Shown piece after piece: positions 3,979 through 55,399 of a stretch of DNA of 64,000 nt. Location of the stretch: NCBI GenBank assembly GCA_965637545.1, contig OZ281499.1, positions 18,104,001 to 18,168,000 of the forward strand, in the 5' to 3' direction. The position numbers were made by a program, and so were the translations under genes. Numbering within the stretch: the stretch's first letter is position 1; each line of letters begins with the position of its first letter. The notes under the pieces were generated by a model. That model was not told where the DNA came from. It did not search any database and worked only from the letters and a program-made list of their open reading frames with translations. Source of the stretch: Phallusia mammillata (taxonomy: Eukaryota).

Positions 3979-5702
3979 ATGCAAAGATTACAACAGGATG
4001 GAGTTAACATGGTAAGAGTTTAGTTCAGTCCATACGTTCTACAAAGTACTGTTGCTTTGCAAATCATTTTGATTTTTTTAATGAAGCGCAACTTAACATT
4101 TTATTGCGAAGTATTTTCGGATTACATTTAGCACTTTAATATAATTAAAACTAAAGATTTTGCAGCAAAATACATAAGATTGTGCAAAAGTCTAATTTTG
4201 TTATGCCAAGTTGTCAACGCAAATAAAATAGTTCAGATAAATTCCATTTTTAGAGGCTTTTTTAACAGAACTTGAAGTTAAAAATGACTATGCTTGATGC
4301 ACTAAGCATTTTTACTGCATTACTGGAAGTGCTATTACAAGGTGGTGTTATATACGGATGGCCTTCCATACAATTTGTCCTCATTCAAGAAGGTTACTTT
4401 GCATTTAACTGCTCTTTCCTTCCAGGCAACGGAACTATGACACCATGCTCATCTGACGAGTCGACATTCAACCTCGTATTTACATTAGCTATTGCTGCAC
4501 AAACAATTAGTTCAGTACCATTTGGTTACATATTGGATAAATTCGGAACATGGACCAGTAGAAGCATTGCATGTTTTCTCAACACTTTTGGCTGGACGTT
4601 GCTGGCTGTGATGTCACCACAGACAGTTGGTTTACTTTTCCCAGCCATGATTTTCATTGCAACATCTGGATTGCATTTCCAAGTCACCAACGTTCAATTA
4701 AGCGACCTGACAACCGACCACAAGTCAGGTTACCTTTTTCTACTTGCCGGTGCTTACGATTCCGCAGTAGTGGTGTTTTTTCTGATTAAAGTGGCCTACG
4801 ACAGTGGCACCCACCTTACAAGTGTTTTTCAGTTCATGGCCTGCATAAGTGTGTTTCCATGGTTACGTACGTTTCTCTTGATGCCGAAAAACAAAATTAT
4901 AGTTGACAAAGATGGCAGCGTCGGTAGATACGGAATTTTGGATGTCCTGCATGTTGCAAAACGAACTCAAATAACCTCTTCAGTCGAAACGGGGTCGCCC
5001 AATACAGACAGATCAAATCCGGGGGTTGAATTATCAATAGACGAGACACAAAATGAAGAGAATGAATTGTCTTTGAAATCGTGTTTAAAATCCCTGCTTT
5101 TTTGGACCAACCTCATATTTCTGTCAATTGGGAGTTTGCGTCTGGTGTTTTTCTTTGGCAGTTACATATCATGGGTTAGTCGGATTCATCCTTCCGACAG
5201 AATTGACTTTTTTGCGAACCTTTTTGGTTACATATTGATTGCTGCCGGCCTGACAGCACCTATCAACGGTGTAATATGCGATGTAGTAGAAAAGTACAGC
5301 GGTGATTCAAATATCAGCCAAAATACTCGAAAACTACGTGGTCTATTTGTCACCATGTTCATCACCGGATCCATTGAAATAATCCTGAACGTTACAGTAT
5401 TAACTAATAGCGTTTATGGTTCCCTAGTGACAATGCTTTTCTTTCGCTCGTTTCTTTTCGGGAGTTTGTCAAATTTTTTAGCCAAAAACTTTCCTTTGAT
5501 TCACTTTGGTCAGCTTTACGGAATTACGGTTTTTGCTGCAGGACTTTTTTCACTTCTACAATACGCGTTGTTTCTGTCCATCGAAGACTCGAATTTGTTT
5601 TCTGTTGTGAATTACCTTCTTTTGGCAGTTTGTATTCTTAGCTTTGTCCACCCGGTTCTTATATTCGTCAAAGCCTACACATCACATCCAGTAAATTACT
5701 AA
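3979..5702 (+). CDS. SLC43A3: SLC43A3-like MFS transporter, copy B (intact); exons 3979-4011 and 4269-5702, ~488 aa
   Basis: Motifs LLEVLLQGGVIYGWPS, FGYILDKFG, TNVQL, GAYDSA and RTFLLMP resemble the SLC43 family (ENBT1/LAT3/LAT4); many hydrophobic segments. Mini exon MQRLQQDGVNM with donor ATG|GTAAGA splices in frame to acceptor TTTTAACAG|AAC TTG. Orthology within SLC43 was not tested. Confidence 0.88.
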
Positions 5703-41471: not shown

Positions 41472-41725
41472 CTATAGAGGTTAGTTTAAAGCTTTAATGT
41501 ACTTTAGCTTTTACTGCGATAATTGCAGAGCTTGCGTAAGATTTTGTACAACATGCTGAAGTCACACAGAAATCAAACCTAGTAACACCAATAAAAAAGA
41601 ATTGTGTCGATAAAACAATCCCAATTTGCACAATTTAGAGGAAAAGCGGCATTGCTGGGGCGCGAAACAATATATTTGAAAGCGAAATGATTTTCTGTAA
41701 AAGCATATAGAGCCAATAAATGATA

Positions 41726-41777
41726 AGCTGCAGACAGTGCACACTGTTTCGACCTATAAGGTCTCATCAGTGCAGCT
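41726..41777 (-). ncRNA. Minimal type I hammerhead ribozyme
   Basis: AGCUGCA CUGAUGA GACC-UUAUA-GGUC GAAA CAGUG-UG-CACUG UC / UGCAGCU: complete core, G10.1-C11.1 pair, GUC cleavage triplet and 7-bp stem I. Confidence 0.88.
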
Positions 41778-43373
41778 GGTGACGAGAGATCGGCCTTCAT
41801 GAAAGTTGTAATTTTTTATTACTGCACTGGCCTTGTTAGTGTAGGCTTTGACGAATATAAGAGCAGGGTGGACAAAACTGAGAATACAAACTGCCAAAAG
41901 AAGGTAGTTTACAATCGAAAACAAATACAAGTTTTCTATGGACAGAAACAACGCGTATTGCATAAGTGAAAAAAGTCCTGCAGCAAAAACCGTAATTCCG
42001 TAAAGCTGACCAAAGTGAATCAATGGAAAGGATTTGGCTAAAAAATTCGACAAACTTCCGAAAAGAAACGAGCGAAAGGAAAGCATTGTCACTAGGGAAC
42101 CATAAATGCTATTAGTTAATACTGTAACGTTCAGGATTATTTCAATGGATCCGGTTATGAACATGGTGACAAATAGACCACGTAGTTTTCGAGTATTTTG
42201 CCTGATTTTTGAATCACCACTGTACTTTTCAACTGCATCGCATATTACACCATTGATAGGTGCGGCCAGGCCGGCAGCAATCAATATGTAACTAAAAAGA
42301 CTCGCAAAAAAGTCAATTCTGTCGACAGAATGAATCCGACTAATCCATGATATGTAACTGCCAAAGAAAAACACCAAACGCAAACTCCCAATTGATAGAA
42401 ATATAAGGTTGGTCCAAATAAGAGGGGATTTTAAACACGATTTCAAAGACAATACATTGCCTTTATTTTGTGTTCCGTCTACGGATAATTCAACCCGCGG
42501 CATTGGTCTCGTCTTATTAGGCGATTCAATATCGTCTGAAGAGTTCATTTGAGTTCGCTTCGCAACATGCAGGACTTCCAAAATTCCGTACCTACCAACG
42601 CTGCCATCTTTGTCAACTATAATTTTGTTTTTCGGCATCAAGAGAAACGTACGTAACCATGGAAACACACTCAGACAGGCCATGAACTGAAAAATACTTC
42701 TAAGGTGGATGCCACTGTCGTAGGCCACTTAAATCAGAAGCAGAAATCTACAGCAGAATCATAAGCACCGGCAAGTAGGAAAAGGTACCCTGACTTATGT
42801 TCCGGTGTCAGGTCGCTTAATTGAACGTTGCTGACTTGGAAATGCAATCCAGATGTTGCAATCATTATCATGGCTGGGAAAAGTAAACCAGCTGTTTGTG
42901 GTGACATCACAGCCAGCAATGTCCAGCCAAAAGTGTTGAGAAAACATGCAATGCTTCTACTGGTCCATGTTCCGAATTTATCCAATATGTAACCAAATGG
43001 TACTGAGCTAATTGTTTGTGCAGCAATAGCTAATGTAATTACGAGGTTGAATGTCCTTCTTCAATGAGGACAAATTGTATGGAAGGCCATCCGTATATAA
43101 CACCACCTTGTACTAGCACTTCCAGTAATGCAGTAAAAATGCTTAGTGCATCAAGCATAGTCATTTTTAACTCTAAGTTCTGTTAAAAAAAGCCTCTAAG
43201 AATGAAACTTCTCTGATCGATTTTATTTGCATTTGCAATTGACATATATAATTGATTTTTGCAGAATCTATTATATTTTGCTGCTTTTTTTGCAAAGCAA
43301 CAGTACTTTGTAGAACGTATGGACTGAACTAAACTTTTACCATGTTAACTCCATCCTGTTGTAATCTTTGCAT
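41754..43373 (-). pseudogene. SLC43A3-like copy J (young pseudogene)
   Basis: Same two-exon layout (43373-43341; 43179-41754); 70-nt deletion at ~43055 and 1-nt loss at ~42735; the last 324 codons are open. Confidence 0.9.
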
Positions 43374-49400: not shown

Positions 49401-51483
49401 AGCTCTACCTCAAAGGTGCAACTTTGGTACGAATGAGGGCAATGGTAAATTTCATACCGAATCAAGTCCGTTTTAAACAAAATCCAGCTGAAATTCGATT
49501 TACAACTCTGTCCTGACAAGAGTTTCGTGGCCATGTTAACAATAATTAGTTTTTACCGAAATCGCTTGTTTGGACTTGATATTTCTGTCTTCCATTTCTT
49601 GAAGAAGCGTTTTGTTGTCACTCTTGAGAGAATCCAGAATGTCACGTGGGTGTTCGAGGTCCAGATCGATTTGGTCAAAACAACTGTGTTTCAATCTTCG
49701 TCGTAAAACCGGATCTTTTCTAATTAAATAAATATTAAAAATGAGTATTTATATTAAATCTGTCGCTTGTTATAACCAGCAAACTATTAAATTGCTCAAG
49801 TTAAGTTCCTAAGGCAATAAACAAATTATAAAACAATGGAAGCTTGTCTCATTGAAAATCTTTAATATAAATTGGTAATTAACATGAGAAATCAAATACG
49901 CTTTTAATAAATGTTTTAGTAAACCTGTAAATTCCGCTGTTGTATCCTGTGTCACCACTCCCTTCTACTTTTTGACTCCATATTGAACTAGTTATAGGCG
50001 ACAAATTCGGAAGAACAAGTTCCTCTAATGGCCGTATAGGTTCGGGATCTTCTTTGCTCTCATCGGATACAGCGTTAGGTAGTTGCTCGGTGTTAAAATC
50101 TCTTTCGCGTTTTGTTCGAAGAAGATTGGGTAAAAAACCTCGCTTGGGGCTAACTGGGTCGGGTTTGGGTGAATTAGGAAGGGTCCGCTCCTCGTCAGAT
50201 GACCCTTCTTCTGGGTCTTCTTGCAAGTTCGCCATATCAGTGCGCTTTCTTTCCAACATCTAAATTTTCGTTTTGATACAAGTTAGGTGTCGGCGTTTTT
50301 GGTTAACAGCTGCAGACAGTGCCTATACTGTTTCGGTCTTTGAACTCTTTTCAAATGTGAACCGGGTCCAAATTATAATGGACTTAATAATGTATAAAAA
50401 TAACATTTCCAATGTAATTTTTTTTACAGTTTTTATGAAATTCCTCCCCTGAACTCATAAAATTCCTCCCTAGGGAGGAATTCCTCCCCGGTTGGGAACC
50501 ACTGCCGTAAAGGCTATTAGGGTAGCCCCTATATTACATCGTTGGAAGTAACAGGCTGAAAATATATGAACTCAACATTTTGTTCAGTCTTCCAAGTAGG
50601 CTACTACTTTTCTAGATGGGGCTAAAACAACACATTACAACTATTTTTTGAAGTGGAATATGTCTAATATGTTATCCCATGTACTGCTAGCGGATACCTC
50701 ATATTGGTAAGAAGTTAAAAGGCACTTCAGCACTTAGTTTAAACAACAAGTGAAGCCTGTTTGTAATAATTACGACAAGATTGATGAAGCATATTGTTGT
50801 TAGAGTAACCACTACTAAACATCAAATTTCAAACCTGTCCCATAAATACCACGAAAACTAGACTTGTTGCAACAAAACTTGAACCCAATTTCATTTCGTG
50901 TTAGCTTCAAATTTAACAGACAGACCTAAGTCCAGAGTTGTAAACGGACCCGAAATTGGAGCCCGAACCCGAAAGTACAAGCCCGAAACCCTGCCCGAAA
51001 CCCTGCCCGAAACCCTGCCCGAACCCGAATCGTTTTTCAGAAGCCCGCATAGGCCCCAACGTTTGATTGACAAGCCTATACTTGAAGCCTCGATAGACGA
51101 TTGGTCTCGAACAAGGCGTTTTAGGGCTGTTTGACATTAGGTTAGGTCCATCAACTAGTTATTTTTTAAATACTGACACAAAGTGTAAAGTCAGGCCTGA
51201 ATTAAGCCCGTTTTATAAATAAAACCTAAGCCCGAACCCGACCCGACTTACAACTCTGCTGCAGCAGTCACTTTGAGTAACGAATTTTGTAACGTAACAA
51301 AGACCAACAAATTAATTTTCTCCTAACCTTCCACAAAAACACTAATACCCCTATTATGACGACACAAGCGAGAATAGCTCCGACAATTTCCCCGGTCTCA
51401 TCGGATGGTGGGGCGGCAGGTGGTTGCTCTGGTGCTTTGTACACATAAACATCTCCATCGTTCTCTTCTCCCAAGTCAGCCAT
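46453..51483 (-). CDS. Unrecognised 570-aa single-pass membrane protein, 6 coding exons
   Basis: Exons 51483-51328, 50259-49925, 49719-49557, 48744-48529, 47942-47800 and 47152-46453. All introns are GT-AG with compatible phases; total 1713 nt. TM segment IVGAILACVVIIGVLVFLW followed by basic residues. Confidence 0.8.
48822..49056. mobile_element. hAT MITE, 235 bp, intronic
   Basis: CAGTGGTCGGCAACC...GGTTGCCGACCCCTG with perfect TSD CCCTATAT. Confidence 0.9.
50933..51258. mobile_element. MITE-like element with CCCGA-rich internal repeats, intronic
   Basis: 11-bp inverted termini CAGAGTTGTAA/TTACAACTCTG and (CCCTGCCCGAAA)x3; TSD not evident. Confidence 0.6.
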
Positions 51484-55306: not shown

Positions 55307-55399
55307 AGCCAATAAATGATAAGCGAACTGCGGAAAGTGCACACTGTTTTGGTCTATAAGGTCTCATCGAACCAAACAATGTGCACTGTCTGCAGCTTA
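55307..55399. repeat. Degenerate hammerhead-family repeat, two partial copies in inverted arrangement
   Basis: AGCCAATAAATGATAAGC...GTGCACACTGTT...CTATAAGGTCTCATC matches 41711-41768, then AATGTGCACTGTCTGCAGCTTA on the opposite strand. Confidence 0.7.

What the first reader, a model, noticed from the sequence alone, without database searches (positions are those of the whole stretch)
41698..41796. Complete hammerhead ribozyme overlapping the stop codon of an SLC43 transporter paralog, in the sense orientation
Seen: a ~99-bp insert absent from paralogs B and F carries, on the gene's own strand, AGCUGCA-CUGAUGA-GACC(UUAUA)GGUC-GAAA-CAGUG(UG)CACUG-UC/UGCAGCU (41777-41726). Every invariant hammerhead position is present. 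The ORF reads through the catalytic core (CTDETL), its TAG sits in loop II/stem II, and the predicted cut (after 41733) lies 21 nt past the stop. Established: minimal type I hammerheads with a palindromic stem III occur in Penelope-like retroelements and metazoan retrozymes and often work as dimers. Inference: any transcript of copy J could cut off its own 3' UTR and poly(A) tail, so the insert may have silenced the gene before its frameshifts arose, or may act as a cis off-switch or as a source of defined RNA ends.
Basis: partly seen in the sequence, partly recalled or inferred. Interest (0 to 1): 0.85.

Follow-up and report, generated by a model that had tools for sequence, protein, structure and literature searches.

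The report
Hammerhead retroelement fragment in a pseudogene
The hammerhead ribozyme motif is real and complete, but it is one very young, 5'-truncated copy of a 282-bp mobile element present at about a thousand sites in this sea-squirt genome; it landed in the tail of an already disabled transporter gene, so its overlap with the stop codon is incidental.

Summary
Observation confirmed. On the minus strand, 41777-41726 carries every invariant hammerhead position and three helices. The TAG lies at 41756-41754 and the predicted cut after 41733. The 100-bp insert (41696-41795) is absent from paralogs B and F.

It is not gene-specific. The insert is the 3'-terminal 100 nt of a 282-bp unit. That unit occurs as perfect tandem arrays and as hundreds of dispersed copies. 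The hammerhead core pattern has 857 genomic hits against 2 for the reversed control.

Copies have scattered 5' ends and two fixed 3' ends (unit ~254 and 282). Many have head-to-head inverted arms and 10-13-bp target duplications. These are marks of Penelope-like-element (PLE) mobilisation, i.e. a non-LTR retrozyme. Autonomous RT+GIY-YIG PLEs with their own hammerheads are in the same genome.

Copy J is a pseudogene: a 70-nt deletion, a 1-nt deletion, and a 1-nt insertion that removed its native stop and let the frame run into the insert. Presumed RNA runs show no contigs on J.

Folding favours a dimer (-50.0 against -34.6 kcal/mol). In J's sequence context the ribozyme fold is predicted at 3% or less. 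A cis off-switch role is unsupported.

Earlier notes of this scan reported the same kind of element elsewhere in this genome. Verdict: new member of a known kind, low interest.

The parts
41696..41795 (-). 100-bp insert: the 3'-terminal part (unit positions 183-282) of a 282-bp hammerhead-bearing retroelement, i.e. a 5'-truncated copy
   Evidence: Absent from paralogs B and F. It is 100% identical to dozens of genomic copies. It maps to unit 183-282.
41726..41777 (-). Type I hammerhead motif: helix I 7 bp (open), CUGAUGA, helix II 4 bp with a 5-nt loop, GAAA, helix III, then GUC and the cut
41732..41733 (-). Predicted self-cleavage site, between C17 (41733) and U1.1 (41732)
   Evidence: Position relative to the core. 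Cleavage itself was not tested.
41735..41746 (-). Helix III segment CAGUGUGCACUG, a quasi-palindrome that can form a 12-14-bp intermolecular helix in a dimer
   Evidence: RNAcofold gives the dimer -50.0 kcal/mol against -34.6 for two monomers.
41789..41795 (-). 5' strand of the distal closing stem of helix I (GGCCGAU). It pairs with 41711-41717 across an 11/8-nt internal loop.
   Evidence: Minimum-free-energy fold of the 100-nt piece.
41711..41717 (-). 3' strand of the distal closing stem (AUUGGCU)
41696..41725 (-). The ~30-nt 'tail' after the ribozyme. Many family copies lack it and end at unit ~250-259 instead of 282.
   Evidence: The 3' ends of family copies are bimodal. This matches the PLE tail described in PMC11167929.
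41754..41756 (-). TAG that ends J's residual ORF, inside loop II / helix II
41754..42728 (-). Residual 324-codon ORF of pseudogene J (SLC43A3-like). Its last 13 codons come from the insert.
41838..41838 (-). Approximate site of a 1-nt insertion relative to B that removes J's native stop and extends the frame into the insert
42747..42747 (-). Approximate site of a 1-nt deletion (frameshift) in J relative to B, at B codon 167
43055..43055 (-). Approximate site of a 70-nt deletion in J relative to B (from B codon 41). Translation from the native ATG stops after 41 codons.

Best explanation
The 100-bp insert is a very young, 5'-truncated, single-arm copy of a 282-bp non-autonomous retroelement. 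That element is a non-LTR retrozyme, probably mobilised by Penelope-like-element reverse transcriptase and endonuclease. It carries a canonical type I hammerhead 37 nt from its 3' end. By analogy with published retrozymes, the ribozyme serves the element itself: tandem transcripts are cut into unit-length RNAs, most likely through a dimer built on the quasi-palindromic helix III. This copy landed in sense orientation in what is 3' UTR in the intact paralogs B and F. In J a 1-nt insertion abolished the native stop, so the frame runs into the insert and ends on a TAG in loop II. J is a pseudogene, so the ribozyme's overlap with its stop codon is incidental and has no selected function. Shown here: the motif, the family, the insertion anatomy and J's lesions. 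Inferred: the retrotransposition route, dimeric action and the lack of function at this site.
For: The core and helices are all present, and Rfam Hammerhead_1 matches over its full length at 22.8 bits. The 100-bp unit is 100% identical at dozens of loci, with 2163 first-look candidates. The 5' part of the unit has 1125 candidates, as 5' truncation would predict. There are 857 core-pattern hits against 2 for the control. The unit forms 282-bp tandem arrays at 100% identity. The 5' starts are scattered, while the 3' ends cluster at 282 (n=29) and around 250-259 with a peak at 254. Head-to-head inverted arms and 10-13-bp target duplications are seen at many loci. The two 3' ends about 28 nt apart fit the PLE tail signature (PMC11167929). 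The genome has autonomous PLEs: a 973-aa RVT_1 + GIY-YIG ORF flanked by minimal hammerheads, with at least three full-length open frames. J carries a 70-nt deletion, a 1-nt deletion and a 1-nt insertion relative to the intact intronless B and F. No contig of the presumed RNA runs lies on J, while DNA contigs bridge both junctions. The literature describes the kind: metazoan type I hammerheads in ~300-bp tandem repeats are non-LTR retrozymes (PMC7229834). They derive from PLEs, and exonic copies tend to sit in 3' UTRs (10.64898/2026.07.22.740005).
Against: No autonomous PLE sharing sequence with the 282-bp unit was found; the 973-aa PLE has a different hammerhead and no BLAST similarity. The window copy has no clear target duplication (3 bp at most) and only one arm, unlike most family insertions. 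The Rfam score is below the gathering threshold. The family is too young for covariation; one compensatory double change was seen in helix III. dN/dS of J against B is 0.41, so J was constrained for much of its history, and the order of insertion and frameshifts is not settled. The RNA status of runs X1-X3 is a guess and only contigs were available.
Confidence: 0.88

Rival explanations
1. One reading: the hammerhead acts in cis on J transcripts. It removes the 3' UTR and poly(A) tail, and so either silenced J before its frameshifts arose or works as an off-switch.
For: The motif is complete and in sense orientation, 21 nt past the stop. The 100-nt piece keeps helix I, its internal loop and its closing stem, and folds as a hammerhead in isolation. 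Some retrozyme hammerheads cleave efficiently as monomers; the Acropora one has kobs ~0.8 per min (PMC7229834). J's dN/dS of 0.41 suggests the pseudogene is recent.
Against: J has three frame-disrupting indels, and translation from the native ATG stops after 41 codons. No contigs of the presumed RNA runs lie on J. In 200-300 nt of J context, helices I and III have a predicted probability of 0.03 or less. The dimer is strongly favoured, and PLE-type hammerheads cleave poorly as single motifs (PMC4209133). The insert is one of about a thousand copies with 0/100 differences from the commonest family sequence.
Confidence: 0.06
2. The solo hammerhead is cut only in trans-assisted fashion. Abundant retrozyme RNAs with the same helix III pair with the J (or other host) transcript to form an active heterodimer, so young insertions in 3' UTRs knock host mRNAs down.
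For: The helix III quasi-palindrome gives a dimer about 15 kcal/mol more stable than two monomers. The repeat is by far the deepest feature in the presumed RNA runs, with summed depth 1500-2400 against 0-35 nearby. Retrozymes are under-represented in genes (preprint).
Against: No cleavage data of any kind exist. The depth comes from contigs of many copies and may include DNA. J itself is not detected.
Confidence: 0.05
3. A chance match to the hammerhead consensus in a random insertion.
For: The Rfam score is below gathering. The fold z-score is only -0.7.
Against: The window holds 1 match against 0.02 expected. The genome holds 857 against 2 for the control, nearly all from one repeat family that places the motif at a fixed position.
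Confidence: 0.01

Closest known systems
Metazoan non-LTR retrozymes (Cervera and de la Pena 2020, PMC7229834)
   Same: A type I hammerhead sits inside a ~300-bp unit (here 282 bp, GC 0.49). The unit occurs as short tandem arrays and dispersed copies, has no ORF, and has target duplications longer than 4 bp.
   Different: Circular RNA and self-cleavage were not shown here. Helix III (4-5 bp) is longer than the 1-2 bp typical of newt or Schistosoma motifs. The host is an ascidian, and I found no paper that describes retrozymes in tunicates in detail.
Penelope-like elements with hammerheads in their pLTRs (Cervera and de la Pena 2014, PMC4209133; Frangieh et al. 2024, PMC11167929)
   Same: Shared features are variable 5' truncation, head-to-head inverted 5'-truncated arms, two alternative 3' ends ~28 nt apart (the 'tail'), a hammerhead near the 3' end, and dimer-prone palindromic helix III. 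Autonomous RT+GIY-YIG PLEs with hammerheads lie in the same genome.
   Different: The 282-bp unit encodes nothing and shares no detectable sequence with the one autonomous PLE examined. Its hammerhead is canonical rather than the minimal PLE form.
Hammerheads embedded in mRNA 3' UTRs
   Same: A sense-strand hammerhead lies downstream of a stop codon and could remove the poly(A) tail.
   Different: Those are conserved across species and sit in working genes. This one is a fresh repeat copy in a pseudogene, with no conservation or expression evidence.

Membership tests
Hammerhead ribozyme, type I | Invariant core C3 U4 G5 A6 N7 G8 A9 ... G12 A13 A14, the A15.1-U16.1 pair, H17 at the cut, and the G10.1-C11.1 pair | tested here: met
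   All are present at 41770-41733 on the minus strand.
Hammerhead ribozyme, type I | Three helices around the core, with helix I open and helices II and III capped | tested here: met
   The minimum-free-energy fold of the 52-nt and 100-nt pieces gives helix I of 7 bp, helix II of 4-5 bp and helix III of 5 pairs.
Hammerhead ribozyme, type I | Rfam RF00163 gathering score (34 bits) | tested here: not met
   The score is 22.8 bits with a full-length match. The best family variants in the genome reach 29.3 bits. The shortfall comes from the longer helix III and a non-consensus loop II, not from the core.
Hammerhead ribozyme, type I | Self-cleavage at the predicted site | not testable with these tools
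   Only contigs were available, and they cannot show RNA ends.
Non-LTR retrozyme | Short (150-450 bp) non-coding unit with a type I hammerhead, found in tandem copies | tested here: met
   282-bp unit, up to 4 tandem copies at 100% identity.
Non-LTR retrozyme | Dispersed copies with retroposition marks (target duplications, 5' truncation) | tested here: met
Non-LTR retrozyme | Expression as unit-length linear and circular RNA | tested here: inconclusive
   The repeat is deep in presumed RNA runs, but RNA status is a guess and contigs cannot show circles.
Penelope-like element (non-autonomous derivative) | Two alternative 3' ends 30-40 nt apart ('tail') and inverted 5'-truncated arms | tested here: met
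   The ends lie at unit ~254 and 282, and head-to-head arms occur at many loci.
Penelope-like element (non-autonomous derivative) | Sequence shared with the pLTR of an autonomous PLE of the same genome | tested here: not met
   There is no similarity to the 973-aa PLE family.
SLC43A3 / equilibrative nucleobase transporter-like (host gene) | Full-length similarity of the intact paralog to proteins so named by public sources | tested here: met
   B matches ascidian and scallop proteins named SLC43A3-like / ENBT1-like, with E down to 6e-87 over 97-99% coverage and Pfam MFS_1. J's own pieces give only a weak MFS_1 match.

The most novel reading that the evidence does not exclude
The solo hammerhead is cleavage-competent on host transcripts because abundant unit-length retrozyme RNAs with the same quasi-palindromic helix III pair with it in trans. 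Fresh sense-strand insertions in 3' UTRs would then act as immediate post-transcriptional knock-downs. That would explain why such elements are depleted from genes, and it could have helped retire copy J.
Probability: 0.06. Interest if true: 0.6.

Novelty: new member of a known kind. Interest (0 to 1): 0.25.

Why it matters
For the gene it matters little: the ribozyme is a passenger in a dead paralog. The element family is more useful. It is a young, apparently still active retrozyme in an ascidian. It shows both the PLE tail signature and the inverted-arm architecture, alongside intact autonomous PLEs. This gives structural support, independent of phylogeny, for the recent proposal that animal retrozymes are mobilised by Penelope-like elements. 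It also gives a compact system (282-nt unit, dozens of identical copies) in which to test that proposal.

Tried and rejected
1. The Rfam scan of the whole window at gathering threshold found nothing. Only the local E-value scan found the motif.

2. Covariation across family copies is uninformative. The family is too young, and almost all variants are single decay changes; there is one compensatory double change in helix III, in L055.

3. The search for the autonomous partner failed. The 973-aa PLE has no similarity to the unit. A 314-aa GIY-YIG ORF lies ~1 kb from a unit copy in L073/L074, but its sister copy L062 lacks the unit, so they are neighbours and not one element.

4. RNA evidence is limited. 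The single read-laying run returned contigs only, so there are no ends, strand or level, and the RNA status of the runs is a guess.

5. For the window copy, only a 3-bp repeat (TTC on the + strand) flanks it. Comparison with B and F favours no target duplication.

6. The order of insertion and pseudogenisation is not resolved. 0/100 differences in the insert set against three indels in J is only weakly informative.

7. A weak Hammerhead_1 match inside an intronless Piwi ORF (L027) was judged to be chance.

Full report
**1.

- The minus strand 41777-41726 reads helix I 5' strand AGCUGCA, core CUGAUGA, helix II GACC/GGUC with loop UUAUA, core GAAA, helix III CAGUG..CACUG, then UC and the helix I 3' strand UGCAGCU.
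- In standard hammerhead numbering every invariant position is present: C3-A9, G12-A14, the A15.1-U16.1 pair, C17, and the G10.1-C11.1 pair.
- The ORF 42728..41754 ends ...CTDETL. Its TAG is at 41756-41754, and the cut after 41733 lies 21 nt further on.
- Rfam at gathering threshold finds nothing in the window. A local E-value scan matches Hammerhead_1 over the whole model at 22.8 bits, against a gathering score of 34 (E 0.0026).
- The core pattern occurs once in the window against 0.02 expected.
- The isolated 52-nt and 100-nt RNAs have the hammerhead as their minimum-free-energy fold. In the 100-nt piece, helix I is extended by an 11/8-nt internal loop and a 7-bp closing stem.

**2. The insert is a copy of a mobile element**

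- The insert is exactly 41696-41795 and is absent from paralogs B and F.
- A search of the window's own genome (240 Mb) finds this 100-bp unit 100% identical at dozens of loci, with 2163 first-look candidates.
- The hammerhead core pattern has 857 exact hits against 2 for the reversed control.
- The full element is a 282-bp unit. It forms tandem arrays of up to four copies at 100% identity.
- The hammerhead occupies unit positions 201-252, the cut follows position 245, and the unit ends ...GCUUUUACA at 282. The window copy is unit 183-282, a 5'-truncated copy.

**3. How the family inserts**

- I tabulated 113 BLAST hits of the unit in 53 loci. The 5' ends are scattered along the unit. The 3' ends fall in two classes, at 282 (29 cases) and around 250-259 (peak at 254).
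- Many insertions are two arms joined head to head in inverted orientation. They are flanked by 10-13-bp target duplications.
- The 5' half of the unit has about half as many candidates as the 3' part (1125 against 2163).
- Together these are the marks of target-primed reverse transcription, and specifically of Penelope-like elements (PLEs). Frangieh et al. report two adjacent internal initiation sites for reverse transcription. These sites explain an optional 30-40-bp 'tail' that is unique to PLE insertions (PMC11167929).
- The genome holds many GIY-YIG-bearing ORFs. One family is a 973-aa RVT_1 + GIY-YIG ORF flanked on both sides by a minimal hammerhead with a palindromic UUAA helix III. That family shares no sequence with the 282-bp unit, so the mobilising partner is not identified. 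More PLE loci could not be fetched.

**4. The host gene**

- B (4272-5702, + strand) and F (25912-27345, - strand) are intact, intronless ORFs of 476 and 477 codons, 98.7% identical to each other.
- B's relatives are ascidian and scallop proteins named SLC43A3-like or equilibrative nucleobase transporter 1-like. An earlier, unchecked note of this scan names the species as Phallusia mammillata.
- J is 91% identical to B and has three lesions:
  - a 70-nt deletion near 43055, so translation from the native ATG stops after 41 codons;
  - a 1-nt deletion near 42747;
  - a 1-nt insertion near 41838.
- The 1-nt insertion removes the native stop that B and F use about 25-35 nt upstream of the insertion site. 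The insertion site is therefore 3' UTR in the working paralogs. J's frame reaches the ribozyme only by accident.
- dN/dS of J against B is 0.41 with dS 0.18. J was constrained for much of its history, and the order of insertion and decay is not settled. The insert's 0/100 differences from the commonest family sequence weakly favour a late arrival.
- The window copy has one arm and no clear target duplication (3 bp at most), unlike most family members.

**5. Would it cut J's transcript?**

- Helix III (CAGUGUGCACUG) is a quasi-palindrome. RNAcofold puts the homodimer at -50.0 kcal/mol against -34.6 for two monomers, with a 14-bp intermolecular helix III.
- This matches the dimeric mode described for metazoan type I and PLE hammerheads. 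Their single motifs cleave poorly in vitro (PMC4209133).
- Within 200-300 nt of J context, helices I and III have a predicted pairing probability of 0.03 or less, because flanking J sequence competes for them.
- Three presumed RNA runs show no contig anywhere on J's body. The repeat bin is deep in those runs, but that depth comes from other copies of the family. A DNA run bridges both junctions, so the insert is real.
- Contigs cannot show RNA ends, and the RNA label of those runs is a guess, so cleavage remains untested.
- Some retrozyme hammerheads do cleave well as monomers (Acropora, PMC7229834). Here helix III is longer than the usual 1-2 bp. Monomer activity of the isolated piece is therefore possible.

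**6. Comparison with what is known**

- The element fits the non-LTR retrozymes of animals: type I hammerhead, ~300-bp tandem unit, no ORF, target duplications longer than 4 bp (PMC7229834).
[quoted passage not shown] That preprint notes that the few exonic copies tend to lie in 3' UTRs (10.64898/2026.07.22.740005).
- I found no paper that treats tunicate retrozymes in detail. One ascidian genome paper lists nine type I hammerhead loci (PMC8704543).
- Earlier notes of this scan had already flagged decayed hammerhead/PLE relics elsewhere in this genome.

**7. Verdict**

- The motif is real and complete. It is a fresh, truncated retrozyme copy in the tail of a pseudogene, and the stop-codon overlap is incidental.
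- A regulatory role is unsupported, though in vitro cleavage has not been excluded.
- It is a new member of a known kind.
- The more useful by-product is the family itself: young, abundant, and showing PLE insertion signatures next to intact PLEs.

Noticed in passing
window 55307-55399: A second, decayed relic of the same 282-bp element. Unit 210-267 lies on the minus strand at 85% identity, joined head to head with an inverted fragment (unit 229-254, 96%). This is the family's typical two-armed architecture.
   Followed up: partly
window 50308-50335: A 28-bp fragment matching unit 227-252 (the 3' part of the hammerhead) at 89% identity. It is probably another old relic.
   Followed up: no
L075:2704-5992 (G000:C3, about 16093700-16097000): An apparently intact autonomous Penelope-like element. 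It has a 973-aa ORF (RVT_1 + GIY-YIG) flanked by identical minimal hammerhead cores ~100 nt upstream and ~240 nt downstream of the ORF, with a palindromic UUAA helix III. At least three loci have the same 973-aa open frame.
   Followed up: partly
L027:2-2611 (G000:C5, about 15658108-15660717): An uninterrupted open frame of 870 codons, running from the start of the fetched locus, encodes a complete Piwi-type Argonaute (Piwi_N, ArgoL1, PAZ, Piwi) with no intron in that span. A weak Hammerhead_1 match (24.3 bits) inside it looks like chance.
   Followed up: no
window 1500-46000: At least nine SLC43A3-like copies or fragments lie on both strands. Only B (4272-5702) and F (25912-27345) were seen as full-length open frames; the others matched in pieces or partially.
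   Followed up: partly
L008 and L009 (G000:C7:10768073 and C7:10534711): The same 110-bp element copy with identical flanks and the same 12-bp target duplication occurs at two places 233 kb apart. This indicates a segmental duplication after the insertion.
   Followed up: no
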